Source of the DNA: Scyliorhinus canicula
Lineage: Eukaryota
Direction: 5' to 3'
Assembly (NCBI RefSeq): GCF_902713615.1
Contig: NW_024055450.1
Coordinates: 1-64,000, forward strand
DNA length: 64,000 nt
The translations under genes were made by a program, and so were the position numbers. How positions within the stretch are numbered: the first letter of the stretch is position 1; each line of letters opens with the position of its first letter. Below, in pieces: positions 23,894 through 62,968 of this stretch. A model generated the notes under the pieces. That model did no database searches. It was given only the letters and a program-made list of their open reading frames with translations, and was not told the DNA's origin.

Positions 23894-24092
23894 GTAAGGA
23901 AGTACAGGATTATCACCCAGCAATGATGAATTAAGGGGAATGTAAATCCAGCCCAGGCTGCTTTCAGATCGGAAAGGGAGCTAAGGTCTGTCCTTGGAGC
24001 TGGTGAATTTTGTGGCTTTGCCAGTTTCTCTGTAAAGTCCTTCTCATTCATTCCCCCTCTTTACAGCACGGATAGAGGCTCTTTGGCCCATT

Positions 24093-24402: not shown

Positions 24403-24504
24403 ATAAGATTATTAGATTACTAGCTCTGGATGAATTGTGTCCCAGGATGCTGTGGGATGTGAGGGAGAGATTGCAGTGGCTCTGACCCAAAGTTTTAACC
24501 ACAA

Positions 24505-27224: not shown

Positions 27225-27959
27225 ATGGAGAAACCGTGGAAATGTGAGGACTGTGGGAAGGGATTCCAAGCCCCATCTCAGGTGGAGATTCATATACGCA
27301 GTCACACTGGCGAGAGGCCGTTCACCTGCTCTCAGTGTGGGAAGGGATTCAGTGATTCATCCGGCCTGTGGAAGCATCAGCGAGTTCACACTGGGGAGAG
27401 GGTGTTCACCTGCTCCCAGTGTGGGAAGGGGTTCACTCAGTTATCCAACCTGCAGTCACACCAGCGAGTTCACACTGGGGAGAGACCATTCACCTGCTCT
27501 CAATGTGGGAAGGGATTCAGTAATTTATTCAATCTGCAGACACATCAGCGAGTTCACACTGGGGAGAGGCCATTCACCTGCTCTCAGTGTGGGAAAGGAT
27601 TTACTCACATTTCCCACCTGCGGAGCCACCAGCGAGTTCACACTGGGGAGAGGCCATTCACCTGCTCTCCGTGTGGGAAAGGATTTACTCAATTATCCAC
27701 CCTGCAGACACACCAGCGAGTTCACTCTGGGGAGAGGCCTTTCACCTGCTCTCAGTGTGGGAAGGGATTCAGTCAGTTAACTCACCTGCAGACACACCAG
27801 CGAGTTCACACTGGGGAGAGGCCATTCACCTGCTCCCAGTGTGGGAAAGGATTTACTCAGTTATCCACCCTGCGGAGACATCAGCGAGTTCACACTGGGA
27901 ACAGACCGTTCACCTCTCAATGTGAGACGGGACTGCATATTTCACCACACCTGCTGTGA
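27225..27959 (+). CDS. C2H2 zinc-finger protein A, 8 intact fingers, no effector domain
   Basis: MEKPWKC..; eight CxxC-12-HxxxH units with TGERPF-type linkers and a degenerate ninth. Large-exon acceptor TTTTACAG|GATATT at 26865. Confidence 0.9.
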   Translation: MEKPWKCEDCGKGFQAPSQVEIHIRSHTGERPFTCSQCGKGFSDSSGLWKHQRVHTGERVFTCSQCGKGFTQLSNLQSHQRVHTGERPFTCSQCGKGFSNLFNLQTHQRVHTGERPFTCSQCGKGFTHISHLRSHQRVHTGERPFTCSPCGKGFTQLSTLQTHQRVHSGERPFTCSQCGKGFSQLTHLQTHQRVHTGERPFTCSQCGKGFTQLSTLRRHQRVHTGNRPFTSQCETGLHISPHLL

Positions 27960-35105: not shown

Positions 35106-36224
35106 AAAGTTGGTCTCACTCTCCTCAGGGAGCCTTCCCCCACCGGGATTCGTCTTTTCAGTACCGTCGGGGCCCTCCAATCGGCCCTTAAACACCTTTG
35201 TCGCAGGAGCTGCCAAATGTGCGACTTAGCTGGTCATAGCCGCAACCGGAAGTCACAGACAAAACTTTTAACTGAGCCAAACGTTTCCTTTTTACGTAGC
35301 CATAGAAACTTTTGCAGTCCATTTTGATGTATTTTGCTCGTTCACATTCTATTCTATTCTCCCTTTGTCTCTCGGTGTCTTGGTCGAAGAACGGACATAA
35401 ATCCTCAGGAATGAATCATCACCTTGGACAGGTTCTGAGACAATTAAGTTTCGACTTATAGGGCCGGGTAACTATAATCGTGGAGTGTGGTTTTAGATTG
35501 TGCAAACGGGCAACGTTCTAGTTTATAGTTTAATATGTAGGTTTCCGAGTTAAAGTAGCTTCTCGTTTGTTTGTTGCATTAAAATCATAAGACTTGAAGT
35601 CCCGCCGTGTGATCCTTTAATTTGTTGACTGGGAATTTGATTTTTTTGAAGACGTTGCTGACCTTTATGGAGATCCAAATCCACAAGTTTTGTTTTCCTA
35701 TTTGAGCCTCGGGCACCTTTCTGTCTCTATTGCTCATGTCAATGACAGCCAGGTGATGGAGCTGAGGGCTGAATTTAGCTGAGAATAACGGGGCCTGTTC
35801 CCCAGTTGGGAAACTGCCATGGGCGTCGCTAATAGAGACAGGAAGGTGCTGGAGGACTGACTGGGAACTGGACATCCAACCGTTCGGGGTGAGGGGGGGG
35901 TGACCGGGGCGAGGGGGGGGGGTGACCGGGGCTGACGGTGATGTGACCCCCAGGGTTCAGTGCCCCCGTGTCCAAAGCGGGGAGTCACGGGGACAGGGTA
36001 CAGAGGAGCTGAAGGGAAACCATTTGGGACCCAGAACATTGTGAACATCCTGTTACTCTGATTGTCTTTGATCCTCAAGTAATTTTCTGTTAGTTTTTTT
36101 TAACCATGTTCTGTTTTATCAATAAACTTTTAACAGTAAACTATTTGAATTTGTTGGACTTTTCCTGATTAAATTTGTTCACTTTCGGGAAAGTGGGTGA
36201 CAGGGGTTGACAGGCTCTTTAACA

Positions 36225-41457: not shown

Positions 41458-42390
41458 CTATAATCGCTTGTGAACTCGCTGATGTGTTTGCAGGTTGGCT
41501 GACTGTGTGAATCCCTTCCTACAGACAGAACAGATGAATGGTCTCTCCCCAGTGTGAACTCTCTGATGTGTCAGCAGGCTAGATGACTGAGTGAATCCCT
41601 TCCCACATTGAGAGCAGAGGAATGGCCTCTCCCCAGTGTGAACACGCTGGTGTTTCAACAGGGTGGATGAATCTCGGAATCCCTTTCCACAGGCAGGGCA
41701 GGTGAATGGTCTCTCCCCGGTGTGAGTTCGCTGGTGAGAGAGCAGGGTGGAGGACTGAGTGAATCCCTTCCCACAGTCAGAACAAGTGAACGGCCTCTCC
41801 CCATTGTGAACTCGCTGGTGTATCAGCAGCTTGGATAACTGAACAAATCCCTTACCACATTCAGAGCAGGTGAACGGCCTCTCTCCAGTGTGAACCGGCT
41901 TGTGTGTCAGTAAGTGGGTTAACTGAGTGAATCCCTTCCCACACTGAGAGCAGGTGAATGGCCTCTCCCCCGTGTGAACCCGCTGGTGTTTCTGTAGATT
42001 GGATGAATTAGTAAATCCTTTGTCACACTGGGAGCAGGTGAAAGGCTTCTCCCCAGTGTGAACTCTCTGGTGTGACTGCAAATGGGATAACAGAGTGAAC
42101 GCCTTCCCACATTCAGAGCAGGTGAATGGCCTCTCACCAGTGTGAACCCGCTGGTGTGACTGAAGGTTGGATGATCGACTGAATCCCTTCCCACAATCAC
42201 AGCAGGTGTATGGCCTCACCCCGCTGTGAACTCGCTCGTGCATCAGCAGGTTGGATGAATCACTGAACCCCTTCCCACAGTCAGAGCAGGTGAACGGCCT
42301 CTCTCCAGTGTGACTGCGTCGATGTATTTCCAGCTCAGACGGAGCTTTGAATCCCTTCCCACAGTCCCCACATTTCCACGGTTTCTCCAT
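41458..42390 (-). CDS. C2H2 zinc-finger protein B, 11 intact fingers, no effector domain
   Basis: ATG at 42390 (MEKPWKC), 11 canonical fingers, stop at 41458; large-exon acceptor TTTTTACAG|GATATTAG at 42742, homologous to gene A. Confidence 0.92.
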
Positions 42391-42989
42391 AGTGCAAGTC
42401 AACTTGTAACTCTCCAGGTTCGATGATCAGTTGAAGCCTCGTCCACACACAAAACACGGGTACGGTCTTTACCCGCTGTAAATGGTATGATGTTTCTTCA
42501 GGCTGTGTAACAGGTTAAAACTCTTTCCACAGTCAGGAACACTCTCACTCGGGTGTGTGTTGTGGGTCTCGCTGCTTTTCCAGTCACACTGATGTTTGAA
42601 ACCTTTAGAAGCTGACAATTCGGACAAACATTTCTTCTAGATTCAAAGGCCGATGATATTCAGGTTCCAGGGAATCGAGTGACTGTCAGATCGAGAGGTG
42701 ACGTTTGAGACTTCTGTCTGTAATTCTTCCTCATCTAATATCCTGTAAAAACAATTTAGAAAATTCCTCGCTGTCAGTACAGAATAGAAACTCAGAACAG
42801 ATAATTCTAGTTCGTATGGAACAACTTTTCCTCTCTCTTATTTTCCGAAAGCTGCAAATCTCCATCCCACACACTCCCTCCATTCTCACTCTGCTGGATC
42901 CCTGTGGTGTGCCGCTGGTCACTGGCTTCCAGTCACTAAAGCAGCCGTCTGTCATCACCCTCTGTCTCCCACAGCTAAGCCAATTCTGA

Positions 42990-45170: not shown

Positions 45171-45955
45171 GGACGGCACAGTGGTTAGCACTGTTGCTTC
45201 TCAGTGCTGCGGACCCGGGTTCCATTCTCGGCTTGGGTCACTGTGCGGAGTCCGAACGTTCTCACCGTGTCTGTATGGGTTTCCTCCGGGCCCTCTGGCA
45301 TTCTCCTACAAGTCCCAAAAGACGTGCTGTCGCCTTCATCGGACGGGGTATTGAATATAACAGTCGGCAGGTCATGTTACAGTTGTATCGGATTTTGGTT
45401 AGGCCACATTTGGAATACTGCATGCAGTTCTGGTCGTCACATTACCAGAAGGATGTGGATGCTTTAGAGAGGGTGTAGAGGAGGTTCACCAGGATGTTGC
45501 CTGGTATGGAGGGTGCTAGCTATGAAGAAAGGTTGAGTAGATAGGACTGTTTTCATTGGAAAGACGGAGGTTGAGGGGAGAACTAATTGAGGTCTACAAA
45601 ATTATGAGAGGTATGGACAGGGTGGATAGCAACAAGCTTTTTCCAAGAGTGGGGGTGTCAATTACAAGGGGTCACGATTTTCAAGGTGAGAGGGAAAAAG
45701 TTTAAAGGAGATGTGCGGGGAAAGTTTTTTACACAGAGGGTGGTGGGTGCCTGGAATGCTTTGCCAGTGGAGCTGGTAGAGGCGGGTACGACAGCATCAT
45801 TTAAGATGCATCTGGACAGATATATGATGGGGTGGGGAACAGAGAAAAGTAGACCGTGGAAAATAGGCAACAGGTTTAGATAAAGGATCTGGATCGGTGC
45901 AGGCTGGGAGAGCCGAAGGGCCTGTTCCGGTGCTGTAATTTTCTTTGTTTTTGAA
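45171..45955 (+). mobile_element. SINE 5' part joined to a CR1 3' end
   Basis: SINE head to ~45330, then VRPHLEYCMQFW..GRLRGELIEVYK and CR1 tail GAAGGGCCTGTTCCGGTGCTGTAATT. Confidence 0.85.
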
Positions 45956-46455
45956 ACCTCACAATGCCCGGGGAATGATTGACGGCATCTCCGGACCAAT
46001 GGAAGCAGAGGGGCGGGACCGGAGGCCTGTTCGGAAGCAGCTGGTCCTCCAACCAATCACAGTGAATGGGTGGGCGGGACTGGGCTGAGTGAAGCATGCG
46101 CAGTGTGATTAATGGCGACGTGAAGAAGGTTCTTTCTCCGATTCACAATCCGTAAATGTCGGAATGGCAGGTCAGTGGGATCAGCCCGGTCGTGAGGCAC
46201 ACTTCCTAAACATATGATAGAAACAGGAAACCGGGAAAAATAACCTACCGGTACCCGGTGACCTGAGCGGAGGCTGCAGCTTTCTCACAGACGGGACGAA
46301 GCAGCTGCCATCTTTGTTTCGCACTAGCAGGAATGCGCATGCGCACACATTTTTAATTGCGTACTCGCAGCAGTGCGCACGCGCACCCAGCATATCTTCA
46401 TTGTAGCAGAGCGCATGCTCAGTCGCCATCATTGTTGGGGGCAACATTTTAAAAA
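45955..46455. promoter_or_regulatory. Overlapping head-to-head promoter/first-exon cassette for ZNF B (-) and ZNF C (+)
   Basis: + strand: CCAAT at 45996 and 46053, GC boxes at 46011 and 46072, donor CAG|GTCAGT at 46171. - strand: NRF1 at 46335-44, YY1-like AAGATGGCAGC at 46304-14, donor CCG|GTAGG at 46249/48. Confidence 0.7.
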
Positions 46456-47599
46456 ATGTTTATGGTGCAGAACAATGATACATATCCAGAGCTGTGACAA
46501 TAATTCGTATTTATATTGTGCCTTGAACAGAATAAAACATTAAGACTTTTCAGAGAAACGTTACAAAATAGGTGATATTGATGATGATGTGGATATATGT
46601 TTGGGAGCTCATCTGGGGGTGAAATATTTCACCATTGTTGCGAACAGTTTGCTTCAGCCTCAGACATTTTGCAGGGACAGGGATCGTGTTTGTCGAGGGA
46701 ACGGAAGAGAATGGGTTTAATCTTCTCAATATTTAAATAGAGTAAATTTCTGCTCCTTCAGCACTTGATGTCACACAAGATCGGACATTGTGTGTCTTGG
46801 AAGGGAACTTACAGGTAGTGATGTTAACATACAGCTGCTGTCCTGGTCCATCCAGGTGGTGGAGGTGAAGGGTTGAGGAGATTCTGTCAAATTGTGATTC
46901 TGATGTAGGTATATATTCTCATTTCATTTTTTTCAAATGCCTCTCCATTGTTCCTATCACTCACACTCCCTTATAATTTCTGTCTTTCCTCTCTGTCTCT
47001 CCACCATGACTCACTCTCTTTTTCTCTCTGTCTGTCTTTCTTGTCACGTGGAATTCCCTAGCCCAGAGGGTTGTGGATGCTCCATTGTTGAATATATTTA
47101 AGGTTAAGATGGTGTGATTTTTGGTCTCTCAGGAAGTCAAGGAAATGGGGAGCTGGCAGGAAAGGAGACTGGAAGACCAAGATCAGCCACAATCGTGTTC
47201 AGTGGCAGACCAGGTTTGACAGGCCAAATGATCTACTTCTGCTTCTGTTTCTTGTATTCTTGCAGAGGCCCGAGTCTTGTGTGGGTTCCGGCCGGTTGGC
47301 AGGTTCCCTTCCCTGAAGGACATTAGTGAACCAGTTGGGTTTTTATGACAATCCAACAGTTTTAATGGTCACTTTATCCCAGTGTTGGCCCCACAAATGA
47401 CCAGATTCATTCAGCTCAATTTCACAACCTGTCTTTGTGTTTTTGTGGGTTCTCTCTCATTCCCTTTTTTTTGTTTTAAATCAATTTAACAGAGTGTTAC
47501 AAGGGGAAGATTTGCAGTCAGGAAACTCAAACCAAACATTACATCAGAATCTGAGGATCGCCCAATTTGTTGCAACCTGAATATCAGTGAATTTTGAAC

Positions 47600-48376
47600 A
47601 TGGAAGGAAAAAGCACCGTTCATAGTGAGGAGAAACCATGGGAATGTGAGGAGGGATTCAGATCCACATCGCAACTGGAAATTCATCATCCCAGACACTC
47701 TGGGGAGAGATCATTCACTTGCTCCGATTGTGGGAAGGGATTCTCTCGATCATCCAGCCTGCTGCAACACCAGCGAGTGCACACTGGGGAGAAACCATTC
47801 AACTGCTCCGTGTGTGGGAAGGGATTCGCTCAGTCGTCCAGCCTGCTGAGACACCAGCGAGTTCACACTGGGAAGAGACCATTCATCTGCTCAGAGTGTG
47901 GGAAAGGATTCATTCGGTCATCTGACTTAATGACGCACCAGCGGGTTCACACGGACGACAGACCATTTAAATGTCCAGATTGCGGGAAGTGCTATAAAGG
48001 TTCTCGGGCTCTGATACTCCATCAACGTGTTCACACTGATGAGAGACCTTTTCAATGCCCAGACTGTGGGAAATGCTTTAAAAGTTCCGGGGAACTTATG
48101 CGGCATCAACGTATTCATACTGATGAGAAACCGTTCAGGTGCTCTTACTGTGGGACTGGGTTCAAGACATCATCTGACCTCACTGTACACCAGCGAATTC
48201 ACACTGGGGAGAGGCCATTCACCTGCTCCCAGTGTGGGAAGACATTCACTCAGTCATCCAGCCTGCTGACACACAAGCGGGTTCACACTGCGGAGAGGCC
48301 TTACATCTGTCCCAAGTGTGAGAAGGGATTCACACAGTCATCCAACCTGATGAGACACCAGCGAATTCACAAGTAA
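47600..48376 (+). CDS. C2H2 zinc-finger protein C, 8 intact fingers plus one degenerate N-terminal finger
   Basis: ATG at 47600 (MEGKSTVH), open to stop at 48376; large-exon acceptor TTTAACAG|AGTG at 47493. Confidence 0.92.
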
Positions 48377-48536
48377 TTACAGTGAGTGGATTTTGCTGTT
48401 AATCACATCCAGGTCTGATCCATCTTCATTGGGGTCTGTTTCTGCTGATGTTAATACATTTCAAACCAGTTACACAGGCTAATAGTCAAGATAACATTTA
48501 AATAAATCAGCTTAGGGTTAACATGCTATATTTAAT

Positions 48537-48762
48537 CTTTTTTTAAAATTTAGAATGCCCGATTCATTTTTTTCCAATTAAGGGGCAATTTAGTGTGGCC
48601 AATCTACCTAACCGGCACATCTTTTTTGTTGTGGGGGCGAAACCCACGCAAACACGGGGAGAATGTGCAAACTCCACACGGACAGTGACCCAGAACTGGG
48701 ATACCTGGGACCTCGGCGCCATGAGGCAGCAGTGCTATCCACTGCACCACCGTGCTGCCCCT
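48537..48762 (-). mobile_element. Short tRNA-derived SINE variant
   Basis: Reverse complement of the 62969-63190 type. Confidence 0.8.
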
Positions 48763-48789
48763 ATTTAATCTTTTTAACACCTCAAACAT

Positions 48790-49300
48790 AAGTTAGTTCC
48801 TTTTGAAGGATCCTCCTTCTCCCCTGTCTTCTCCATTCTCATCTCCAAAAACAACTGCGAGGTGCTCGTGGAGATTCTTTGTCATGAAGATTGAGACAAT
48901 CCGATCAGCTGCCTCTGCTGTTTTTCTCCCTTCCTCTAACCCACCAGACAAAACTGTCTCAAAAAAAATGTCCCTTGTCTGAGTCATGAACTCACATCTA
49001 TCTCCAGTTTCTGTCCGGTCTCCTGTCATGTCCTGTTCAATCTCATCTTGTTTACAAAACCTGCCTTCTGCTCCATTGACCCTATTCTCACTAAACCGCT
49101 GACCATCCAACTTCCCCACATTAACTGATATTGTTAACAGTTCTCTCTCTCTTCTGGTGCTGCCCCTCAATTTAAATACACCATCCTCACCCATCCTGTG
49201 AAAACAACCCTTGACCCCCAACTCCTTTGCAAATGACCACCCCATCTCCAACCTCCCTTTCCTCTCCAATTTGGTGTCTCCCAAGAATCTATCCTTGGCC
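48790..49300 (+). mobile_element. Old L2-like LINE ORF2 fragment
   Basis: Remnants of FFVMKIETIRSAASA, DPI.TK and PISNLPFLS with stops and indels. Confidence 0.6.
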
Positions 49301-49329
49301 CCTCCTGTTTCTCATTTACATGATGGCAC

Positions 49330-49785
49330 GAGAATCCATAGAATCACCACAGTGCAGAAGGAGGCCACTCGGCACTTCAAGTTTGCACTGACTGCCTGAA
49401 AGTGGACCCTAGCTAGGCCCACTCCCCCTTCCTCTCCCAATAACACCGCCTAACCTGCACATCTTTGGACTGTAAGAGGAAATCAGAGCACCTGGAGGAA
49501 ACTCACAGATTTGAGGAGTATGCACAAACTACACACACTGTGTGATATTTGCACGTTCTCCCCGTGTCAGCGTGGGTTTCCTCCAGATGCTCTGGTTTCC
49601 TCCCACAGTCCAAAGATGTGCAGGTTAGGTGGATTGGCCATGCTAAGTTGCCCTTTAGTGTCCAATATTCGAGTGGGGTTACGGGGATAGATCGGGGGAG
49701 TGGGCCTAGGTGGGATGATCATTTAGAGGGTCAGTGCAGAATCAATGGGCTGAATGGCCTCCATCTGCACATTGGGGATTCTATT
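49330..49785. mobile_element. Two 5'-truncated SINEs joined head-to-head
   Basis: Minus copy ~49330-49530 and plus copy ~49540-49785, both truncated near the V-like core. Confidence 0.7.
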
Positions 49786-49789
49786 AAAG

Positions 49790-51420
49790 ACAAATGTGGG
49801 TTCATTAGAGGACGAGACAGGATTTATTTATAATGGGGAAGAGGGAAATGGCAGAGAAGCTAAATAATTACTTTGTGTCTGTCTCCACGGAGGAACGTAG
49901 AAAAACCTCCCAGAAATAAGAGAGAAACTACAGTCTAATGGGAATGAGGAACTGAATGAGATGAGTGAAAAAGTAGCACTGGAGAAATTAATGGGATTGA
50001 AAGTTGATAAATACCTGGGACCCGATGATTTACATTGCAGAGTGTCAGAGGAGGTGGCTGTCGACACAGTGGATACGCTGCCGGTCATCTTTCAACATTC
50101 TATAGACTCTGCAGATTAGAGGTTGAAAATGTAATCCCACTTTTTCAGAAATGGGGAAATAAAAGGGGAATGACAGACTTGTTATCCTGACATCAGTAAT
50201 GGGAAAAATACTAGAATCTTTTGCAAAGGATGTATTAACAGCAACATTTAGAAAATAATTAACTGATCTGGGAAATTCAGCATGAATTTCTGAAAGAGAA
50301 ATGATATGTTCCATGGGGCAGCATGGTAGCACAGTGGGTAGCACAGTTGCTTCAAAGCTCCAGGGTCCCAGGTTCGATTATCGACATGGGTCACTGTCTA
50401 TGTGGAGTCTGCATGTTTTCCCCGTGTCTGCGTGGGTTTCCTCCGGGGCTCCGGTTTCCTCCCACAGTCCAAAGATGTGCAAGTTAGGTCGATTGGCCAT
50501 GATAAATTGCCCTTTGTGTCCAAAAAAGGTTCGGTGGGGTTACTGGGTTATGAGGAGAGGGGAGAAGTGTGGGCTTAAGTTGGGTGCTATTTCCAAGGGC
50601 CAGCACAGACTTGATGGGCCGAATGCCCTCCTTCTGCACTGTAAATTCTATGATTCCAAAGCTGTTGAAAGTTTTCTTTAAGAATATTACCACTGTGTCT
50701 GCGTGGGTTTCACCCCACAACCCAAAAATGTGCGGGTTAAGTGGATTGGCCATGCTAAATTGCCCCTTATTTGAAACAAAACATAACTGGGTACTCTACA
50801 TTAATAAAAAAAAAGAATAATGCTGCAAAAGAGATAAGGGAACCAGTGGATGTGGTGCATTTGGATTTTCAGAAGACTTTTGATAAAGTCCAACAGAGGA
50901 GGTTCGGAAACATATGAATGGTGGGTGGGGATATACTGGCACAGATTGAGGAGTCACAGACAACAGCGAGCAGGAATAAATGGATCATTTTCAGCTGGGC
51001 AGACTATGACCAGTGAGGTATTACAAGGATCAGTATTTGGGCTCCAGTTATTCACAATCTGTGTCAATGATGTGGGTGTGGGGACCAAATGCAATATTTC
51101 CATGTTTGCTGATGACTCAAAACTAGGTGAGAATTTGCGTTCTGAGGAGGATGCAAAGAGGATTCAAGAGTATTTGGACAGGATAATGAATGGGCAAGAA
51201 CATGGCAGATGGATGATAATATAGACAAAATATTGTCTATTATATTGTCTAAATATTGGAACGGTGATGTAGTATATTTCTTAAATGGTGAGAGATTGGG
51301 AAGTGCCGATATCCAGAGGGATCTGGGTGTCCTTGTTCATGAGTCACCAAAAGCAGGTGTAGCAAGTGATCAGGAAGGCAAATGGTGTGTTGAACATCAT
51401 TGCAAGAGGATCTGAGTATC
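49790..51420 (+). mobile_element. CR1 fragments with an inserted SINE (50315-50655) and a partial SINE (50690-50790)
   Basis: KVDKYLGPDD, LDFQKTFDKV, QGSVFG and FADDSK remnants. Confidence 0.78.
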
Positions 51421-51453
51421 TGTTGGAATTTATTATCAAGTTAGCAATACTTT

Positions 51454-53025
51454 TTTCAAAGCGCTGGACAAACTCATCATGGCGTTCGTATGGGGGGGTA
51501 AAAATGCTAGGATCCCAAAGAAGGTCTTACAAAAAACAAAAACCAGGGGAGGGCTAGCCCTCCCGAATCTACAATTCTACAACTGGGCAGCAACAGCCGA
51601 GCGAGTAAGGGGATGGATCCAGGAGCCAGAGGCTGAGTGGGTGCGTGCGGAGGAGGCCTCCTGCATGGGAACCTCCCTCCGGGCCCTCGCCACGGCAGCA
51701 CTCCCATCCCCACCCAAAAAACACTCCAGCAGCCCAGTGGTGACAGCCACCCTCCAATCCTGGAACCAACTGCGGCAGCAACTTGGCCTGACCAAAATGT
51801 CGAACAGGGCTCCCATCTGCAACAACCATAGGTTCACACCAGCACTGACTGACGCCACCTTCAAAAGGTGGAGGCAGGACGGGGGGACACTGACAGTCAG
51901 GGACCTATACACGGACGACAGGATCGCAACACTGGACGAACTGACAGAGAAATTTCAGCTAGCTGGGGGGAACGAGCTACGGTACCTGCAGCTCAAAAAC
52001 TTCCTACGAAAGGAGACAAGGACGTACCCACAACCGCCACGACAGACACTACTGGAAGACCTACTGGACGCAAGTATCCTAGAGAAAGGGAACTGTAGTG
52101 ACATGTATGACCGACTGGTAGATAGGGACGACACCGTACTGGACGCAACAAGAAGGAAATGGGAGGACGACCTGGGGATGGAGATAGGGTGGGGACTCTG
52201 GAGCGAAGCACTGCATAGGGTCAACTCCACCTCCACGTGCGCAAGGCTCAGCCTGACGCAACTAAAAGTGGTACATAGAGCCCACTTAACAAGAACCCGT
52301 ATGAGTAGGTTCTTCCCGGAGGTGGAAGACAGATGTGAACGGTGCCAAAGAGGCCCGGCCAACCACGCCCACATGTTCTGGTCTTGCCCCAGACTCGTGG
52401 AGTACTGGACAGCCTTCTTCGAGGTTATGTCCAAAGTGGTGGGAGTGAGGGTGGAGCCATGCCCGATAGTGGCGGTCTTCGGGGTTTCAGAACAGCCAGA
52501 TCTATTCCTGGGGAGGAGGGCGGACGCCCTTGCCTTTGCCTCCCTGATCGCCCGCCGTAGAATCCTGTTTGGCTGGCGGTCAGCAGCACCGCCCAGAGCT
52601 GCGGACTGGCTGTCCGACCTCTCGGAATCTCTCCAAATGGAGAAAATCAAATTTGCCATCCGAGGGTCGGACGACGGCTTCCACAGAACGTGGGAGCCAT
52701 TCATGCAACTGTTCCGGGACCTATTTGTGGCCAATGTACAAGAGGAAGAATAGTCGGGGGAAGGTAGCGGGAGGGGGGGGGGGGCTACAGGTTCGGTACG
52801 GGGGTTCGATGGCTAGCTAAGGCCCAAAACCAAACTAAATAAACATGTTGGGGGGGGGGGGGGGGGGGCGGGCGCAGTTACTACTACGAAGATGCCTACC
52901 TGTAAATATGTATGTTAATTTTTGCGTGTTTGTTTGTTTTTTTTTGTTCTTTTTCTCTCCTAACAATTTGTAATTTGTTCAATATAAAATATGAAAACTG
53001 AATAAAAACATTTATAAAAAAAAAA
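51454..53025 (+). mobile_element. 5'-truncated L1, second family, uninterrupted ORF2 C-terminus
   Basis: Open 424-aa frame 51479-52753 with CERC..H..C knuckle, AATAAA at 53001, A-tail; 16-bp TSD AAGTTAGCAATACTTT at 51438-53 and 53026-41. Confidence 0.95.
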
Positions 53026-53707
53026 AAGTTAGCAATACTTTACTAAAACCAAAACGGTTCAATATCTAAAATCCTGGGCCTTCTGACCTGATCTGGCTTC
53101 GAGCAGAGGAACCAGATTAGAACAATGTGCTGATTACACTCACAGCTCTTTTTAATGTGTCCTCCTTTGAGTATCCAATAATCTCATGGTCTCAATGTGC
53201 AGTCACTTATGTAATAGAAATAAACATTAAATCAACACGCCATTGGTTCCTACTTTCTGAGTGTGTTTAATGGAGTCTGGATGCAGAGAATTCTGTAAAA
53301 ACCACAATGTATATTGAACCTGTTGGGAGGAAACAATCTGTTACAATTTGAAATGAAGTCCAGGATTTCTGTAAAGCTGTGGCTCCATTATCAGCAAAGC
53401 TCTTTTCATCCACGAAGCAGATAAATTACTGAGTGAATCTCTTCCCACACAACCACGACACCTAGAAGGACAAGAGCAGCAGATGTAGGGAACAACACCT
53501 CGTGGTAGTTTCCCTCCAAGCCACACGCCATTCTGACTTGGAAACATACCGCCGTTCCTTCACTGTTGCTGTATCGATATCCTGGAACTCTCTTCCTAAC
53601 AGCGCTGTGGGTGTACCTACACCACATGGACTGAAGAGGTTCAAGAAGGTGGCCCACCTCTGCCTTCTGAGTAAATTTAATGCACCAGTTCTGAAGTGGG
53701 AGCCACT

Positions 53708-53980
53708 CGGGGCAGGTACAACACTTGTCAGGAACAGTGTAAGTCTCTCTCTACACTTTCCCAACAAACACTCCCAAGGTATGTACAGTCCATCTAAGGT
53801 ACAGAACAAAGTTCTCTCCAAATCATCCCATCACAAACTCACGGGGCAAGTACAGCCCAGGATAGGTACAAAGGAAAACTCCCACTACACGTTACATCAA
53901 ACAGTGCCAGAGAGTAGGTACAGCACAGCTTTGATAAGGGTAAAATTCCCGCTGCCCTGCCCCATCAAACACTCCCAGCC
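53708..53980. repeat. Degenerate ~65-bp tandem repeat
   Basis: Recurrent GGTACAGC/AC..CTACAC..CATCAAACACTCCC motifs, about four copies. Confidence 0.55.
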
Positions 53981-54089
53981 CCTAATGAACTGGATTCTGG
54001 GAGGGCATTTACCAGGTAATGGAATGATGTCATAAAGCATCACCATTCAATGGAGCTGGTTCTCTCCTTGTCCCTTTAAAGTGGAAAAC

Positions 54090-55155
54090 GGGAACATCCT
54101 GTCTCCAAACACATCCCACCCTGTTCACACTGAGAACCCCAGGGTGGGGAACTGAGACATCCTGTCGCCAAACACATCCCACCCTGTTCACACTGAGAAC
54201 CCCAAGGTGGGGAACTGGGACATCCTGTCTCCAAACACATCCCGACGTGTTCACACTGAGAATCCCAGGGTGGGGAACTGAGACATCCTGGGCGCGATTC
54301 TCCGCTGCCCACGACGGATCGGAGAATAGCGGGAGGGCGTACCCGACATTTTTCACGCCCACCCGCTATTCTCCCCCCCCCCCCCCCCCCACGGCCGCCC
54401 CACGACATGAATCGCTGCTCGCCGTTTTTTACGGCGCACAGCGATTCTCCCCAGGCCGATGGGCCAAGTGCCCAGGCCTTTACGACCGTTTTTACGGCAG
54501 CAAACACACCTGCTTGCTGCCGTCGTAAAAACGGGCGCAACATGCCCGTCCTGGGCATCCATGGACCCGCGATCGGTGCCCACCGATCGCAGGCAGTGCG
54601 TCCGTAACGGACGCACTCTTTCTCCCTCCGCCACCCTTCAGGATCAGTCCGCGGGGCGGCCGAGGGAGATGACGGCCCTGCGCATGCGCGGGTTGGAGCC
54701 GTCCAATCCGCGCATGCGCGGCTGACGTCATTGTGCGCGTCAGCCGGCGTGACACTTGGTGCGCAGACTTAGCGACGGTCGCTAAGCCCACAATGTCGTG
54801 CTTCACGGGGCCCGCTGCTAGCCCCGCCCGGGGGGGAGAATCGGGTCCCGGGAGGGGGCGCGGACGCTGCCGTGAAACACGGCCAGTTTCATGGCAGCCT
54901 TTATGACTCGCCGCATTTGCGGAGAATTGTGCCCCCTGTCTCCAAACACATCCCACCCTGTTCACACTGAGAACCCCAGGATGGGGAACTGGGACATCCT
55001 GTTTCCAAACACATCCCACCCTGTTCACACTGAGAACCACAGGGTGGGAACTGAGACATGCTGTCTCCAAATAAATCCCACCCTGTTGACACTGAGAATC
55101 CCAGGATGGAGAACTGGAACATCCTGTCTCCGAACACATCCCACCGTGTTCACAT
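54090..55155. repeat. 63-bp minisatellite, about 7 units, split by a MITE
   Basis: CATCCTGT at 54095, 54158, 54221, 54284, then 54995, 55057 and 55120. Confidence 0.92.
54290..54934. mobile_element. Non-autonomous DNA transposon (MITE), PIF/Harbinger-like, 645 bp
   Basis: 16-bp TIR GGGCGCGATTCTCCGC / GCGGAGAATTGTGCCC (two CpG-type mismatches); 3-bp TSD CCT at 54287-89 and 54935-37. Superfamily inferred from the GGG termini and 3-bp TSD. Confidence 0.8.
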
Positions 55156-55400
55156 TGTTTGTTTAACTATCTTTCCCAAATAATTTACACAGCCTCTTAT
55201 TATTTTTGATTTTGAGTCCCTGAACTCTGACAGTGATTGGTAAGTGGACCAGGTCTTTATTGGACATTCATTTCCCTCTTTCCGTGTTTATTGAAGCTAC
55301 AGAGCTTCATATCCTCTTATTTTGTACCTATTGTGGACAATATTTCACTTTATTGCTCTTTGGGTAAATAACGTAAAATTTTGATGTCTTCAGGGTTTTT

Positions 55401-55540
55401 ACAGTAAGAAGTCTTACAACACCAGGTTAAAGTCCAACATGTTTGTTTCAAACACGAGCTTTTGGATCACTGCTCCTTCCTCAGGTGTTGTAAGACTTCT
55501 TACTGTGTTCACCCCAGTCCAAAGCCGGCATCTCCACATC
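55401..55540 (-). mobile_element. Penelope-like terminal-repeat remnant with a perfect 23-bp inversion and a decayed hammerhead
   Basis: ACAGTAAGAAGTCTTACAACACC at 55401-23 is the exact reverse complement of 55484-506; minus-strand core CUGAGGA-A-GGAGC-AGU-GAUCC-AAAA-GCU-C-GUG. Confidence 0.72.
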
Positions 55541-55584
55541 GTAAGAAATAGGAGTCAGCTACGACACCACTACCACTACCTCCT

Positions 55585-55900
55585 GTGAGATAGCAGTGAT
55601 GTAGTGGTATTGTCACTGGACTACTAAACCAGAAATCCAGGGTAATGTTCTATCACCTGGGTTCAAATCCCGCCACTGCAGATGGTGACATTTTAATTAA
55701 ATAAAAATCTGGAATTAAAAGTCTAATGATGACCATGAAATCATTGTCGATTGTCATTAAAACTCAACTGGTTCACTCATGTCCTTTAGGGAAGGAAATC
55801 TGCTGTCCTTACCTGATCTGGCCTCCATGTGACTCCAGACCCACAGCAATGTGGATGACTCTTAACTCCCTCCAGGGCAATTAGAGATGTTCAATAAATA
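55585..55900 (+). mobile_element. tRNA-derived SINE, third family
   Basis: GGGTTCAAATCCC B box and body GTCCTTTAGGGAAGGAAATCTGC..GACTCCAGACCCACAGC; fragments also at ~47310-47370, ~57715-57770 and ~62440-62500. Confidence 0.65.
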
Positions 55901-55989
55901 TGAACAAATTTTTTTTTAAAATCAGTCTATCGAGCCTGCTCCACCATTGAATAAGGTCACTTTACTGCCGACCCCCAAAAGAAGCCTCT

Positions 55990-56690
55990 CCAGTCCAGTC
56001 AGCATCCAGGGATAACTGAGTGAATCCCCTCCTACACTCGGAGCAGGTGAACGGCTTCTCTCCTGTGTGAACTCACAGCTGTAGTGAGGCAAGAAGATTG
56101 TCTGAACCCAGTTCTACAGCGTGAACATGTTAAGGGGGCATCAGTTATCCAGAATTGTTTTAAAACTCCTCACAGTCTGGATATTTAAATGGTCTCTCCC
56201 CAGTGTGAACTCACTGATGTCTCAGCAGATTGGAGGAATGAGCAAATCCCTTCTCACAGTGGAAGTAGGTGAACAGCCTCTCTCCAGTGAGAAATGTTGG
56301 TGCAGCTGCAAGTGGTGTGAGTGTGTCAGCCCTTTCCCACACTGGGAGCAGGTGAATAGTCTCTCCCCAGTGTGAGTGCACTGATGGATTTTCAACTTGG
56401 ATGGGTAATCAAATCCCTTCTCACAGTCTCGACATTCCCATGGTTTCTCCCCGGTGTGACTGCATTTATATACTGGCAGGCCAGATGATTGGCTGAAGCC
56501 TCGTCCACACACAGGACACATGTGCAGTTTCTCTCCACTGTGAACGGTGTTTTTTCCTGCTATGTTCAAAATCTGATGATATTCAGTTTCGATAAATTCA
56601 GTGAGTGTTAGATGCTGATATGATGTTTGGTTTGTGTTTCCTAACTGCAAATCCTCTCTTTCAAAGACCAACTATATTAACACCTATAAC
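55990..56690 (-). pseudogene. Degenerate C2H2-ZNF unit E
   Basis: Track ORF 56222-56671 has the leader EREDLQLGNTNQ.. and ~3 fingers, then a frameshift; further broken fingers continue to ~55990. Confidence 0.85.
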
Positions 56691-56784
56691 TGAGCTGGAG
56701 GTATTTTTCAATTAAGCAGAAACAGACTCGGATGGACATGGTTCAGTCCTGAATATGATCACCAGCAAATTCCAATCACAACAG

Positions 56785-57486
56785 TTACTTATGAGTTCGC
56801 TGGTGTTTCAGCAGGTTGGATGACTGACTGAATCCCTTCCCACATACTGAGCAGGTGAATGGCCTCTCCCCAGTGTGAATATACCGATGTGCAAGTAGGT
56901 GGGATGATTGAGTGAATCCCTTCCCACACTGGGAGCGGGTGAACGGTCTCTCCCCAGTATGAACTCGTTGGTGTCTCAGCAGATTGGCTGACTGAGTGAA
57001 TCCCTTCCCACACTGGGAGCAGGTGAATGGCCTCTCCAGAGTGTGAACTCGCTTGTGTGTCCGCAGGGTGTATGAGTGAGCAAATCTCTTCCCACACTGG
57101 GAGCAGATGAACGGCTTCTCCCCAGTGTGAACCCGTTGGTGTAATGCTAGGTTGGATGACCGATTGAATTCCAACCCACACTGAGAGCAGGTGAATGGCC
57201 TCTCCTGAGTGTGAAGTCGCTGGTGTCTCAGCAGAGTGGATATGTGAGTAAATCCCTTCCCACACTGAGAGCAGGTGAATGGCCTCTCCCCAGTGTGGCT
57301 GCGTCGATGAGTTTCTAGCTGGGATGGGTAATTGAATCCCTTCTCACAGTCCCCACATTTCCATGTCATCTCCCTGTCCTGACTGCAATTATGTTCCGAA
57401 AGGCCAGATGATTGGCTGAAATCTTGTCCACACACACAACACGTGAACGGTTTCCCCCAGCAGCGATTGGTGCTTTTTTCTTCCAT
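56785..57486 (-). CDS. C2H2 zinc-finger protein D, 6 intact and 2 degenerate fingers
   Basis: ATG at 57486 (MEEKST); one finger has C>R and the first lacks its second His; large-exon acceptor TTCACAG|GGTG at 57595; inverted paralog of gene C. Confidence 0.88.
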
Positions 57487-58414
57487 GTTCAAATTACGAT
57501 GATGTTTAGGTTACAATAAATTGGCCGACTCCATCAGATTCTGATATCATTTTCAGTTTCAGTTTCCTGACTGCAAATCCTCCTCTTCTAACACCCTGTG
57601 AAATTCATTTGAGAGCAGAAAAAAGGGAGTGAGAGAGAAACCACAAAAACACAAAGGCAGGTTGTGAAATTGAGCTGAATGAATCTGGTCATTTGTGAGG
57701 CCAGCACTAGGAAAAAGTGACCATGAAAACTGGTTCACGAATGTCCTTCAGGGAAGGGAATCTGCCAAAGTTGAGTCCCACTCACTTACCCATCACTCCT
57801 GTGCTCATTGACCTACATTGGGTACTGGTTAAGCAACATCTCAATGGAACATTCACATCCTTGTTTGCAAATCTTGCTCTATCCTATCTCAGCTGCACAG
57901 ATGTTTAAATCTTCAACCACAGATCAAACAGAAACACTTACATTCAGATCCTGATGAACTGAATGACTGTCAGATTTTGAAGTGAATCTTGGTTGATTTT
58001 TCTGAGGGAGGGAGAGAGCGAGAGAGAGAGCGAGCGAGCGAGCGAGAGAAAGAATGAATTTTATATGTCGAAAGCTGGTAGCCCTCACCCTCCACGGGTG
58101 TTTTGCATTGTTTTTTGAGAGTCACACCAGCTCCAGAGACATGGAACCCCTCACAGGTAACAGAGCAGAGCACTAAAAGCTCAAAATTGTTGAGAAATGC
58201 TTAGAAATACTCAGCTGTGAAGCAATTTCATTGTTTTCAATATTAAAATGTCCCACTGTAGCCTAAAGCTGGAAAGATATCAGCAACTCTGGAGTCGGAG
58301 GAAAAGTTTCCTAGTTGAGGAAATATCCGGGGAACGGGGGGTGATGTCACCGTGCAAGTGTCGGTGCGTGATGACATCACAGACAGGAAGTCAGAACATC
58401 TGGATCTGTGCAAA

Positions 58415-58720
58415 CCATATATTATGGAGGATGTGACGGTCCTTGAGAGAGTGCAGGGGAAACTTAACAGAATAGTTCCAGGAATGAGGGATTTTAGTTG
58501 CAATGTTAGGTTGGAGAAATTGCGGTTGTTCTCCTTGGAGGAACGGAGATTGATAGAGGTACAAGTTTCTGATTGGTCTCGGTAAAGTAGTTAAAGAAAC
58601 GTTGCTCCTTCCAGCTAATTGCAAAAGGATTTCAGGACACAGATTTAAGATTTGGAGCAAGATCTACAGGCTGATATGAGGCAGAAATTTTACACTGAGT
58701 GGTAATGACTTGGAACTCAA
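58415..58720 (+). mobile_element. CR1 3' fragment
   Basis: VLERVQGKL..RLEKLRLFSLEERRL remnant. Confidence 0.7.
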
Positions 58721-58895
58721 TGCTTACACTGAAAGTGCAATAATATCCTGGTCCTGATGAATTGAGTGATGCTGTAGGAGTTTGATGTCAGGGTTCGCTT
58801 GTGTTTCCTGCCTGTAAATCCTTTTCTAATACCCTGAAAATGAAAGTTGCAAAAGCCATCTTTGTCAGTCCAAACAAGAAATTCAGGAAAGAAAA

Positions 58896-59229
58896 GGGGC
58901 CTCACGGTAGCATGGTGGTTAGCATCAATGCTTCACAGCTCCAGGGTCCCAGGTTCGATTCCCGGCTGGGTCACTGTCTGTGTGGAGTCTGCACGTCCTC
59001 CCCGTGTGTGCATGGGTTTCCTCCGGGTGCTCCGGTTTCCTCCCACAGTCCAAAGATGTGCGGGTTAGGTGGATTGGCCATGCTAAATTGCCCGTAGTGT
59101 AAGGTTAATGGGGGGATTGTTGGGTTACGGGTATAGGGTGGATACGTGGGTTTAAGTAGGGTGATCATTGCTCGGCACAACATCGAGGGCCGAAGGGCCT
59201 GTTCTGTGCTGTACTGTTCTATGTTCTAA
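58896..59229 (+). mobile_element. Young tRNA-derived SINE, full length
   Basis: Near-identical to the 17422 copy. Confidence 0.93.
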
Positions 59230-59899
59230 GTAAACCTATTCTTGGTTTGAGTTTGCTTTGCGTAAATCCTCGCTTTCTAACCCCCTGTAAAAGGATTTTC
59301 CAAAGTTAATCACCGTCAGTCCAGGATAGAAATTCACAGCATCGCTCCTCCTGCTCCAGGATGAATGCTCATACTCCCTGCTACACTTTGCCCCTCCATG
59401 TCATCAGCAGTCCCTCTATTCGAGGATGATGTTTACTCGGGGTAGGTTGAGAGATTTGACAGGTTCTTCATGTGACTGGACACAATCATAGATCTCTAGA
59501 CACATGGAGGAGAATAGCCCAGGAGGTAGTGAGAACTGAAAAGCAGAACGTCTTTCTCTTCTCTTCCTGCTCTGCTTCAACAATAAGACGTTGGGACTCA
59601 AAGGCTAATGTAGATTGATGGTTGGCTTCATTCTGAACGTAGGGTAACAAATACCTCCTAAAACAATCACCTCCTTCAACACATCCCAAACGACATGCTG
59701 TTAGGAGAGTTGGACATTCTGAATTCTCCCTCTGTGTACCCGAACAGTGCAGAAGGAGGGCATTCGGCCCATTGAGTCTGCACCAACCCTTCGAATGAGC
59801 GCTCTACCCATTTACATTCCCTCGTCCACCCGCCTTATCCCCATGACCAAGAACCTAACCTGCACATCCCTGGATATTAAGGAGTAATTAAGCGTGGCC

Positions 59900-60105
59900 A
59901 ATCTACGGTAGCACAGTGGTTAGCACTGTTGCTTCACAGCGTCAGGGTCCTAGCTTCGATTCTTGCCTAAGGTCACTGTCTGTGCAGAGTGTGAAGATGT
60001 GATGTTAGGTAATTTGGACATTCTGAATTCTCCCTCAGTGACCCGAACAGGCGCCGGAATGTGGCGATAGGGGATTTTCACAGTAACTTCATTGTGACGT
60101 TAAGG
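59900..60105 (+). mobile_element. SINE, second tail type, internally deleted
   Basis: Head GGTAGCACAGTGGTTAGCAC, then GGACATTCTGAATTCTCCCTC..TTTTCACAGTAACTTCATTG. Confidence 0.7.
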
Positions 60106-60117
60106 ATTATTCTTTTT

Positions 60118-60520
60118 TTTAAAAACATTGCCTCCAACAAAGATGGCGGCTCCACATTCGCCCTGGTGAGCTTTCCCCCAATAAAGATGGTGGCCGTTCA
60201 CCTGGGTCTAACATGAGAATCTGCAGCCCCGCTCGGTACAAATTGGATCCGGTAAGCTCTTTTCCCAGGTTTGCGGCTCACACAACATGTTTACGCCTGC
60301 CCACCACGTGCTTCTTCGCTCCCTCCTGACCGATTTTAGATCTCAACAAGGAGCCGCTGTCCATCGCCATGACCCATACTGTGCATGCTTCAATCAAGCC
60401 CAGTCCAACCCCTCATTCACTCCGATTGGTTGGAGGACCAGCCGCTCCCTGTCGGGCCTCCAGTCCCGCCCCTCCTCTTCCAATTGGTCGAAAGCTGCCG
60501 TCAATCACCCGGGCATTGTG
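60118..60520. promoter_or_regulatory. Inverted paralog of the 45955-46455 cassette: first exon of ZNF D (-) and first exon of an unseen + strand gene
   Basis: ATTGG at 60425 and 60483, CCCGCCC at 60465, minus donor at 60331/30; + strand YY1 AAGATGGCGGC at 60140-50 and donor CCG|GTAAG at 60252. Confidence 0.72.
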
Positions 60521-60767
60521 ACGGTGACAGATGGTGAGAGCGGCCACAGGCTGAGACAATCGTTGATTGTCCAATAATAACAGTGAGAGTCTCACTGGGA
60601 CAATCAGACAATAATAGTGGAGATGGGGCCCAGAGGAGAAACAGCAAAGGATTCACTCACTTTGAGAGTAAGAAACACAGTTCATAACATTTATAAGCAG
60701 AATTAGGCCATTTGGCCCATTATTATTATAAGTGAGTCTGATCCGCCATTCTGGCTGATATATTCCT

Positions 60768-61983: not shown

Positions 61984-62968
61984 CCTCATCTGTCACCTTT
62001 AATGCTACAGACTAAGAGTTGGATTGCAAAATCAGCTAGAGCATCTCCTCCATGGAACACATGACCCAGGAGATTGAATAGGCAATTCAGCCTCCCGAGC
62101 CTAAACACATCAATGTGATCATGGCTGATCCCATCATGACCTCAACTCCACTGTCCTGCCTTTTCTCCATAAACCTTCAAACCATTACCACTTAAAAAGC
62201 TGTCTAACTCCTCCTTAAATTTACTCACTGTCCCTGCAACTGGGATAGCAAATTCCACAGATTCACAACCCTTGGGAGAAGTAGTTTCTCCTCAAATCTG
62301 TTTTAAATTTTCCACTTCTTATTATATGGCCTTCTGAAAGCAAAAAGGGAGCATAAGAGAGAGGCCACAAAAACAAGGAGACAGGTTGTGAAATTGGGCA
62401 GAATCCATGGGACCAGCTGGAGAAAAGGAGACCATGAAACTGCTGGATTATTGTAAAAACCCAACTGTGTGTTAATATCCTTCCGGGAAAGGTACCTGCC
62501 ATCAGCTCTGAACCTACACAAGAGTTTGCCAGGACATGAACAGAACCTGTCACTCCACCAGCAACAAAGACGAAGGCACCAGTGTGGACAGACACAATCA
62601 CTTCCAGTCACATATCATTCTGAGTTGGACATATATACCTGTTCCTCCATTGTCAGTGAATGACAATCCTGTAATTCTACCAAAAAATATTCTGGAACAC
62701 CTTGGTCGCTTGAAATACTCAACGGATATACTTGTTAATCAAACAATGCTGTATTCTATTGCAATGCTGGACCAACATCTGCTTAACAACTAATTTCTCC
62801 TGGAACATACCTCCCTGTTCTGTGCTGTACTGTTCTAATTCTAATTCTAATTTAGTGTCCCGCAATGGAAATGTCCGTACCCAAAAAGTCCACTGTAGTT
62901 TGGATCCATGGGAAAGACGAGAACGAGGTGACACACTTTAAGAATGAAACATGGGGGGGGGGGGGGGG

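What the first reader, a model, noticed from the sequence alone, without database searches (positions are those of the whole stretch)
45955..60520. Duplicated cassette of two overlapping head-to-head first exons appears to be the unit of ZNF cluster expansion
Seen: 45955-46455 and 60118-60520 are inverted homologs, with CCAAT spacing 57 versus 58 bp, GC box, GCATGC, YY1 motifs and both splice donors preserved. In each, the promoter and first exon of one gene lie inside intron 1 of the oppositely oriented gene, with the donors only ~80 bp apart, so both transcripts must cross the same ~300 bp. Flanking large exons pair accordingly (A with B, C with D). Inference: a conserved transcriptional-interference or mutually exclusive switch linking ZNF pairs, propagated by inverted duplication, and a + strand B-type gene is predicted beyond the window. 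I do not recall this being described.
Basis: partly seen in the sequence, partly recalled or inferred. Interest (0 to 1): 0.75.

Follow-up and report, generated by a model that had tools for sequence, protein, structure and literature searches.

The report
Duplicated two-way promoter of shark ZNF genes
Two mirror-image copies of a short CpG-rich promoter block sit between fingers-only zinc-finger genes of a catshark-type genome, and its two start regions appear to face each other. That layout is common in mammals, and whether both directions are used here could not be tested with RNA.

Summary
The sequence observation holds. 45959-46118 and 60521-60364 are inverted homologs (81.5% over 162 nt, E 5e-37). 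A second block, 46404-46456 versus 60167-60116, is 77% identical, with weaker homology between the two. CCAAT spacing (57 versus 58 bp), one GC box, GCATGC and YY1 sites on both strands are kept. GT donors 79-80 nt apart are also kept, but the A-side donor of copy 2 is weak.

Both copies are CpG-island-like (o/e 0.87 and 0.70; flanks 0.33-0.49). Each lies upstream of an A-type fingers-only C2H2 gene (A 47493-48376 +; C 57595-56785 -).

YY1 motifs and 5' splice sites mark direction, and they point inward from both ends. The sequence therefore favours two facing promoters about 0.2-0.35 kb apart. The first exons themselves do not overlap.

The "switch" idea is untested. Convergent promoters and 5'-overlapping gene pairs are well described in mammals and are usually co-regulated.

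A third ZNF pair in the window lacks the cassette, so it is not the universal unit of expansion. This scan had already noted the same head-to-head ZNF pairs on other DNA of this genome. Verdict: a new member of a known kind, of modest interest.

The parts
45959..46118 (+). Cassette 1, L block (A-type arm): CCAAT 45996 and 46053, GC boxes 46011 and 46072, GCATGC 46094, YY1 core 46112
   Evidence: 81.5-85% identical to 60521-60364; motifs; perfect runs of 12-19 nt
46095..46170 (+). Predicted non-coding exon 1 of gene A. The start is inferred just upstream of YY1 46112; the donor CAG|GTCAGT has its last exon base at 46170
   Evidence: Only + strand donor scoring >=2 in 46060-46700 and only one >=4 up to the acceptor. 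The start is inferred; no RNA data
46249..46445 (-). Predicted non-coding exon 1 of gene B. The start is inferred upstream of YY1 sites 46429 and/or 46314 (- strand); the donor CCG|GTAGGT has its last exon base at 46249
   Evidence: Only - strand donor scoring >=2 in 45700-46470. Homologous to CCG|GTAAGC at 60251. The start is inferred
46404..46456 (-). Cassette 1, R block (outer end of the B-type arm): YY1 ATGGCGAC and an A/T run
   Evidence: 77-78% identical to 60167-60116
47493..48376 (+). Gene A exon 2: acceptor, 106-nt leader, ATG 47600, 258-aa protein with 8 intact C2H2 fingers
41458..42742 (-). Gene B exon 2: acceptor at 42743/42742, a leader made of dead fingers, ATG 42390, 310-aa protein with 10-11 fingers
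60364..60521 (-). Cassette 2, L block (A-type arm), inverted copy
60116..60251 (+). Cassette 2, B-type arm: AAGATGGCGGC at 60140, AAGATGGTGGC at 60183, donor CCG|GTAAGC with last exon base 60251
60331..60375 (-). Cassette 2, predicted exon 1 of gene C: YY1 core 60370, weak donor TCG|GTCAGG with last exon base 60331
   Evidence: donor score below 2
56785..57595 (-). Gene C exon 2 (A-type): acceptor, leader, ATG 57486, 233 aa, some fingers degenerate
56222..56671 (-). D: tandem partial copy of leader plus fingers just 3' of C, with no ATG at its head. Probably a decayed exon
58777..59336 (-). Two B-type acceptor/leader relics (y 58777-58895, x 59245-59336) inside the predicted intron 1 of C

Best explanation
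The two blocks are paralogous copies of one CpG-island-type promoter module of a catshark family of fingers-only C2H2 zinc-finger genes. The module has two arms. The A-type arm runs: two NF-Y CCAAT boxes, an SP1-type GC box, GCATGC, YY1, then a 5' splice site. The B-type arm runs: YY1 sites (plus NRF1 sites in copy 1), then a 5' splice site.

The strand-specific signals of the two arms point toward each other. The two start regions would therefore be convergent and about 0.2-0.35 kb apart. Each short non-coding first exon would lie in the other gene's first intron, with the two donors 79-80 nt apart. From there the transcripts would splice to the big finger exons: A (47493) or C (57595) on one side and B (42742) on the other.

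Shown:
- homology of the two blocks and retention of the motifs;
- CpG-island character;
- gene structures with good acceptors;
- inverted duplication of module plus A-type gene.

Inferred:
- the positions of the starts;
- use of the donors;
- use of both directions.

The most likely working mode is the ordinary one for such promoters: a shared open CpG island that co-regulates both genes. A mutually exclusive switch is less likely.

My confidence that this is a duplicated shared promoter module is about 0.85. My confidence that the two arms really fire convergently is about 0.55. The overall figure covers the whole statement.
For: Homology: E 5e-37 for the L block, plus the R block and an above-chance middle.

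Promoter character: CpG o/e is 0.87 and 0.70, against 0.33-0.49 in the flanks and 0.42 for the whole window. These are the only non-repeat CpG-rich spots between the genes.

Motifs: the set NF-Y, SP1, NRF1, YY1 is the one reported as enriched in vertebrate bidirectional promoters (PMC10887517).

Direction signals: YY1 and the 5' splice site are the directional signals. YY1 acts just downstream of the start, while NF-Y, SP and NRF1 act both ways (bioRxiv 10.1101/2023.06.27.546584). Here YY1(+) 46112 is followed by donor(+) 46170, and YY1(-) 46429/46314 by donor(-) 46249. The same order holds in copy 2 (60370 then 60331; 60140/60183 then 60251).

Donors: in copy 1 these two are the only ones scoring >=2 on their strands within the cassette and its near flanks.

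Need for an upstream exon: A, B and C all start their big exon at strong acceptors, with the ATG inside that exon, so each needs an upstream exon.

Divergence: the rest of intron 1 is not alignable and the fingers are 70-77% identical, while the L block is 82-85%.

Protein family: Pfam finds only C2H2 fingers.
Against: - There is no RNA evidence at all.
- None of the exact protein products is on record, and no near-identical protein was found.
- The A-side donor has C at +3 in both copies and scores below 2 in copy 2.
- The B-type arm has no conserved upstream elements beyond about 25 nt, and copy 2 lacks the NRF1 stretch.
- The last ~170 nt of intron 1 are 91% identical. The 82-85% identity of the L block is therefore not by itself proof of selection.
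- Differences are only mildly depleted in motif columns (7 of 59, against 25 of 108 elsewhere).
- No B-type gene is seen next to cassette 2 within the window.
Confidence: 0.55

Rival explanations
1. One-way promoter. Only the CCAAT/GC/YY1 arm is a promoter, for A and C. The inner YY1/NRF1 sites and the reverse 'donor' are a downstream regulatory cluster in intron 1 of the A-type gene. B is a decaying gene or uses another start.
For: CCAAT and GC boxes occur in one arm only. Copy 2 lacks the NRF1 stretch. No B-type partner is visible at cassette 2. B's leader holds dead fingers with stops. An earlier scan note reports YY1+NRF1 modules amplified inside intron 1 of a family member (s1-195955; not checked here).
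Against: The reverse-strand donor is kept at the homologous place with a fair score in both copies (4.0 and 5.0). B has a strong acceptor and an intact 310-aa frame. Between 42742 and 45955 the only other CpG-rich spots are repeat copies. YY1 sites in the inner arm all point toward B. The B-type paralog E has a YY1/GCATGCGC-type promoter at a similar distance (about 3.1 kb) from its acceptor.
Confidence: 0.2
2. Classical divergent bidirectional promoter. The B-type start lies outside the CCAAT block, so the two transcripts run apart and never overlap.
For: NF-Y, SP1 and NRF1 sites act in both directions. In copy 2 a fair + strand donor (ATG|GTGAGA, 4.7) lies at 60533, 12 nt outside the L block. 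Earlier scan notes describe mirror-image promoters in other pairs of this family (s1-198233, s1-253617; not checked here).
Against: Homology between the copies stops exactly at the outer edge of the L block (45959 / 60521). In copy 1 a LINE tail abuts there. No - strand donor scoring >=2 exists in 45700-45959. No internal mirror symmetry was found in either cassette. All YY1 motifs point inward.
Confidence: 0.08
3. The facing promoters form a conserved interference device or binary switch, so that only one gene of each pair is expressed per cell or allele.
For: The geometry is compatible with it. Convergent pairs can act as switches, and Ly49/KIR are family-wide examples (PMC10887517). Donor spacing is kept at 79 vs 80 nt despite indels.
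Against: Nothing here tests it. In human cells convergent promoters are positively co-regulated and co-transcribed (PMC11735407). Human 5'-overlapping coding pairs are not down-regulated (PMC8076222). The motif set is of the housekeeping CpG-island kind, unlike the small TATA-based Ly49 switch. A third pair in the window lacks the cassette.
Confidence: 0.1
4. Dead relics. The cassettes are leftovers of an old duplicated cluster and are no longer transcribed in either direction.
For: Earlier scan notes say about half of the family's copies are broken. D, x, y and F in this window are relics. C has degenerate fingers and a weak exon-1 donor. No transcript or annotation for A, B, C or E was on record.
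Against: High CpG o/e (0.87, 0.70) implies that both cassettes escape germline methylation. The frames of A, B and E are intact. Absence from the protein collection is weak evidence, because no protein of this genome appeared in any of the searches.
Confidence: 0.1

Closest known systems
Convergent promoter constellations (host start plus downstream antisense start within one CpG island; Wiechens et al. 2025, PMC11735407)
   Same: Two start regions facing each other a few hundred bp apart inside one CpG-rich block, giving 5'-overlapping antisense transcription units.
   Different: In human the partner is mostly a non-coding downstream antisense RNA. Here both partners would be spliced protein-coding paralogs. 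The starts here are inferred from motifs, not measured.
[quoted passage not shown] INO80E/HIRIP3 (PMC8076222: 582 human pairs; PMC11890862)
   Same: Head-to-head coding genes whose first exon and promoter lie within the partner's 5' part.
   Different: The human pairs are unrelated single genes whose overlap varies with start-site choice. Here the pair consists of two related ZNF classes and was copied within a gene family.
Classical bidirectional CpG-island promoters with NF-Y, SP1, NRF1 and YY1 sites (reviewed in PMC10887517)
   Same: The same motif set, CpG-island character and head-to-head genes less than 1 kb apart.
   Different: The classical type has a midpoint from which the two transcripts diverge. 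Here the directional signals (YY1, 5' splice sites) point inward.
Ly49 Pro1 and KIR sense/antisense promoter switches (PMC10887517, PMC10842785)
   Same: A competing two-way promoter element copied along with the members of a fast-evolving gene family.
   Different: [quoted passage not shown] None of this is shown here, and the motif set differs.
Gene families that duplicate as head-to-head pairs around a shared promoter (COL4A1/2, A3/4, A5/6, see PMC12141075; histone H2A-H2B pairs, own knowledge)
   Same: The pair plus its shared promoter behaves as a unit of duplication.
   Different: Those promoters are divergent and those families are small and ancient. This one is a large lineage-specific ZNF family with much decay.

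Membership tests
C2H2 zinc-finger genes without effector domain ('fingers-only') | Tandem C2H2 fingers with TGEKP-type linkers | tested here: met
   PF00096 and PF13465 hits: A E 5e-62 with 8 stretches, B E 5e-74 with 10, C E 5e-46 with 6. Regex scan.
KRAB-ZNF / SCAN-ZNF / BTB-ZNF | An N-terminal KRAB, SCAN or BTB domain | tested here: not met
   No such Pfam hit in A, B, C or D. The ATG lies in the finger exon, 3 codons after an in-frame stop. The upstream exon is short and has only tiny frames.
Bidirectional promoter (head-to-head genes, starts less than 1 kb apart) | Two oppositely oriented genes flanking one promoter region | tested here: met
   B (-) and A (+) flank cassette 1, with strong acceptors at 42742 and 47493. 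At cassette 2 only the A-type side (C) is visible.
Bidirectional promoter (head-to-head genes, starts less than 1 kb apart) | CpG island with NF-Y/SP1/NRF1/YY1-type motifs | tested here: met
   CpG o/e 0.87 and 0.70; motifs listed. The motif set follows PMC10887517.
Bidirectional promoter (head-to-head genes, starts less than 1 kb apart) | Measured transcription starts on both strands | not testable with these tools
No transcript or annotation is on record.
Convergent promoters / 5'-overlapping head-to-head pair | The start of each transcript lies downstream of the start of the other (starts face each other) | tested here: inconclusive
   Sequence signals agree: YY1 and donor motifs point inward in both copies (rule). 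The starts themselves were not measured.
Convergent promoters / 5'-overlapping head-to-head pair | Both transcripts detected and spliced as predicted | not testable with these tools
No reads could be laid.
Probabilistic sense/antisense promoter switch (Ly49/KIR type) | Variegated, mutually exclusive output set by competing promoter strengths | not tested
   This needs single-cell or reporter data. The motif architecture (a CpG island, not a 100-bp TATA element) differs from Ly49.

The most novel reading that the evidence does not exclude
The facing-promoter cassette is a heritable toggle, copied hundreds of times with the elasmobranch fingers-only ZNF family. Each pair would then express only one of its two paralog classes per cell or allele. 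That would be a family-wide stochastic-choice system for transcription factors, comparable to Ly49/KIR or protocadherin promoter choice.
Probability: 0.07. Interest if true: 0.7.

Novelty: new member of a known kind. Interest (0 to 1): 0.3.

Why it matters
If the convergent layout is real and general in this family of reportedly about a thousand genes, it would be a natural, many-times-replicated test set. It could show whether facing promoters of two coding genes co-regulate or exclude each other. It could also show how promoter architecture travels with genes during the expansion of lineage-specific ZNF families. As it stands, it mainly documents that shark fingers-only ZNF genes carry an NF-Y/SP1/YY1 CpG-island promoter module that is duplicated along with them. 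That is useful for annotation, because the non-coding first exons are easily missed, but it is not surprising.

Tried and rejected
- RNA test: the look-up of sequencing runs listed three raw oligo-dT RNA runs of the species (X20-X22) and possible RNA contig sets.
They were present only inside the window file in local within-window BLAST/nhmmer scripts.
- Transcript and annotation look-ups: exact look-ups of the A, B, C and E products found nothing. The word searches with A (whole protein, first 40 aa, first 70 aa) gave only generic ZNFs or nothing.
The Logan contig of P0007 has an unrelated 5' end.
- Extra cassette copies: blastn and nhmmer with L-arm, B-arm and full-length profiles found none. 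A marginal L-block hit at 35846-35898 (E 0.003) does not look related.
- Mirror symmetry within a cassette: none.
- Homology of E's promoter to the B-type arm: motif-level only. It shares a 14-mer, GCATGCGCTCTGCT, plus a YY1 site; 2 and 8 of 1000 shuffles reach the score, and nhmmer gives E 1.8.
- Selection on motifs within the L block: differences are only mildly depleted in motif columns.
- The big representative protein search and structure tools were not used because they do not bear on the question.

Full report
**Observation.** The two stretches are real inverted homologs.
- blastn aligns 45959-46118 with 60521-60364 at 81.5% over 162 nt (E 5e-37), and 46407-46456 with 60165-60116 at 78%.
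- A global alignment shows three zones. The L block is about 82% identical. The middle zone (46119-46320) is 40-65% identical with several indels, yet still scores above all 500 shuffles (31 vs a maximum of 25). The R block is about 75% identical.
- A 66-nt stretch is present only in copy 1.
- Motif positions were checked by script: CCAAT 45996 and 46053 (57 bp apart) vs 60487 and 60429 (58 bp apart); GC box 46011 vs 60471; GCATGC 46094 vs 60388; YY1 core on both strands in both copies.
- The second GC box (46072) is not kept in copy 2. The two NRF1 palindromes (46335, 46375) lie in the 66-nt stretch that copy 2 lacks.
- Both copies are CpG-island-like: o/e 0.87 and 0.70, against 0.33-0.49 in the flanks and 0.42 for the window.
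- No third copy exists in the window, by blastn or by nhmmer profiles.

**Surroundings.**
- The window holds five C2H2 finger exons and several relics.
- A (47493-48376, +), C (57595-56785, -) and B (42742-41458, -) each begin at a strong acceptor.
- In A the ATG (47600) lies 3 codons after an in-frame stop, so the upstream exon must be non-coding.
- Pfam finds only C2H2 fingers, with no KRAB, SCAN or BTB domain.
- A and C share their leader (83%) and the last ~170 nt of intron 1 (91%). Their fingers are 70-77% identical, and the rest of intron 1 is not alignable and is full of repeats.
- Cassette plus A-type gene were therefore duplicated together in inverted orientation, tail to tail.
- B belongs to a second leader class.
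- Cassette 1 is bounded on the left by a LINE tail (45908-45949 matches many copies). Cassette 2 is bounded on its R side by a repeat from about 60100.

**Direction of the two arms.**
- I scored donors with a rough matrix whose frequencies I recalled from published vertebrate tables, so the scores are approximate.
- The - strand donor has a good homolog in copy 2: CCG|GTAAGC at 60251 (5.0).
- The + strand donor keeps GGTCAG in copy 2 but scores below 2 there.
- Donor spacing is 79 vs 80 nt.
- In human promoters YY1 and the 5' splice site are the strand-specific signals. YY1 acts just downstream of the start and the splice-site motif from about 50 bp downstream. NF-Y, SP and NRF1 act in both directions (bioRxiv 10.1101/2023.06.27.546584).
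- Applied here, YY1(+) 46112 is followed by donor(+) 46170, and YY1(-) 46429 and 46314 are followed by donor(-) 46249. Copy 2 has the same order (60370 then 60331; 60140 and 60183 then 60251).
- Both arms therefore point inward. If both are active, the starts face each other 0.2-0.35 kb apart, and each first exon lies in the other gene's intron 1.
- The exons themselves do not overlap, so the mature mRNAs would share no complementary sequence. This corrects the finding's title.

**What could not be tested.**
Runs of the species exist.
They were present only in local within-window scripts.
- Exact look-ups and word searches found no transcript-derived or annotated protein for A, B, C or E.
- Ray homologs lie in files too large to read.
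- Both-way use, the start positions and the three junctions therefore remain inferred.

**Unit of expansion.**
- A third head-to-head pair lies at 21-28 kb: a truncated relic F (- strand, acceptor about 21590) and gene E (+ strand, exon 26865-27959).
- E is 84% identical to B over leader and dead fingers.
- About 3.1 kb upstream of its acceptor, E has a GC box, GCATGCGCTCTGCT and CCAAGATGGCGGC at 23640-23720.
- This resembles the B-type arm only at motif level, and no CCAAT arm faces it.
- Two B-type leader relics also lie on the A side of cassette 2.
- The cassette is thus one duplicated module among pieces of variable size, not a fixed unit.
- This agrees with earlier notes of this scan on other DNA of the same genome (s1-200271, s1-195954, s1-198233, s1-253617, s1-203735). 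Those notes describe the same fingers-only family in head-to-head pairs around shared promoters and also left two-way use unproven.

**Comparison with what is known.**
- The motif set and CpG-island character are those of vertebrate bidirectional promoters (PMC10887517).
- Facing starts within one CpG island are described as convergent promoters. They make up 24.5-29.2% of CAGE-supported annotated starts in human cell lines and are positively co-regulated and co-transcribed (PMC11735407).
- 582 human coding pairs overlap at their 5' ends without evident down-regulation (PMC8076222).
- Switch behaviour of competing promoters copied through a gene family is known from Ly49 and KIR.
- My searches found no paper on shark ZNF pairs.
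- The new elements are that both partners are spliced coding paralogs and that the module was copied with them.

**Verdict.** The sequence observation is sound apart from the weak A-side donor of copy 2, the lost second GC box and the 'overlapping exons' wording. The convergent layout is the reading the sequence favours, at about 0.55. The switch idea is unsupported. The arrangement is a new member of a known kind, and interest is modest (0.3) until RNA data are laid on it.

Noticed in passing
window 21330-21600 (-) and 23640-27959 (+): A third head-to-head ZNF pair. Relic F has an acceptor at about 21590, a leader plus dead fingers, and is cut by a repeat near 21330. Intact gene E (exon 26865-27959, ATG 27225, 244 aa) is 84% identical to B over the leader. 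E's likely promoter (23640-23720: GC box, GCATGCGCTCTGCT, CCAAGATGGCGGC) has no CCAAT arm facing it. A strong donor GAG|GTAAGG lies at about 23893.
   Followed up: partly
window 47296-47493 vs 57768-57596: The last ~170 nt of intron 1 of A and C are 91% identical. That is more than the promoter block (85%), the leader (83%) or the fingers (70-77%). Weaker copies of the same element lie at 62342-62518 and 55730-55803. It could be a repeat-derived piece kept for splicing or regulation, or a gene-conversion tract.
   Followed up: partly
window 58777-58895 and 59245-59336 (-): Two acceptor-plus-leader relics of the B class, without finger arrays (x is cut by a repeat), inside the predicted first intron of C. 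They are signs of earlier rearrangement, or possibly alternative 5' exons.
   Followed up: partly
window 56222-56671 (-): A partial tandem copy (D) of leader plus about 3-4 fingers directly 3' of C, with its own acceptor-like sequence but no start ATG. Probably a decayed duplicate exon.
   Followed up: partly
window 54035-55173: A G+C-rich (0.61), CpG-rich (o/e up to 1.24) tandem repeat of 62-63 nt in two arrays, lying between the tail-to-tail A and C/D genes.
   Followed up: no
window 42400-42742 (-) and 26865-27224 (+): The 5' leaders of B and E consist of dead zinc fingers with stop codons ahead of the working ATG (MEKPWKC...). This matches an earlier scan note on this family.
   Followed up: partly
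They were left out of all later external searches.
   Followed up: no
window 45959-45987 and 46040-46058: The longest perfectly kept runs in the L block are not all named motifs: TCACAATGCCCGGG at the outer edge, TGATTGACGGCA (contains a TGACG half-site) and GCTGGTCCTCCAACCAATC around the second CCAAT box.
   Followed up: no
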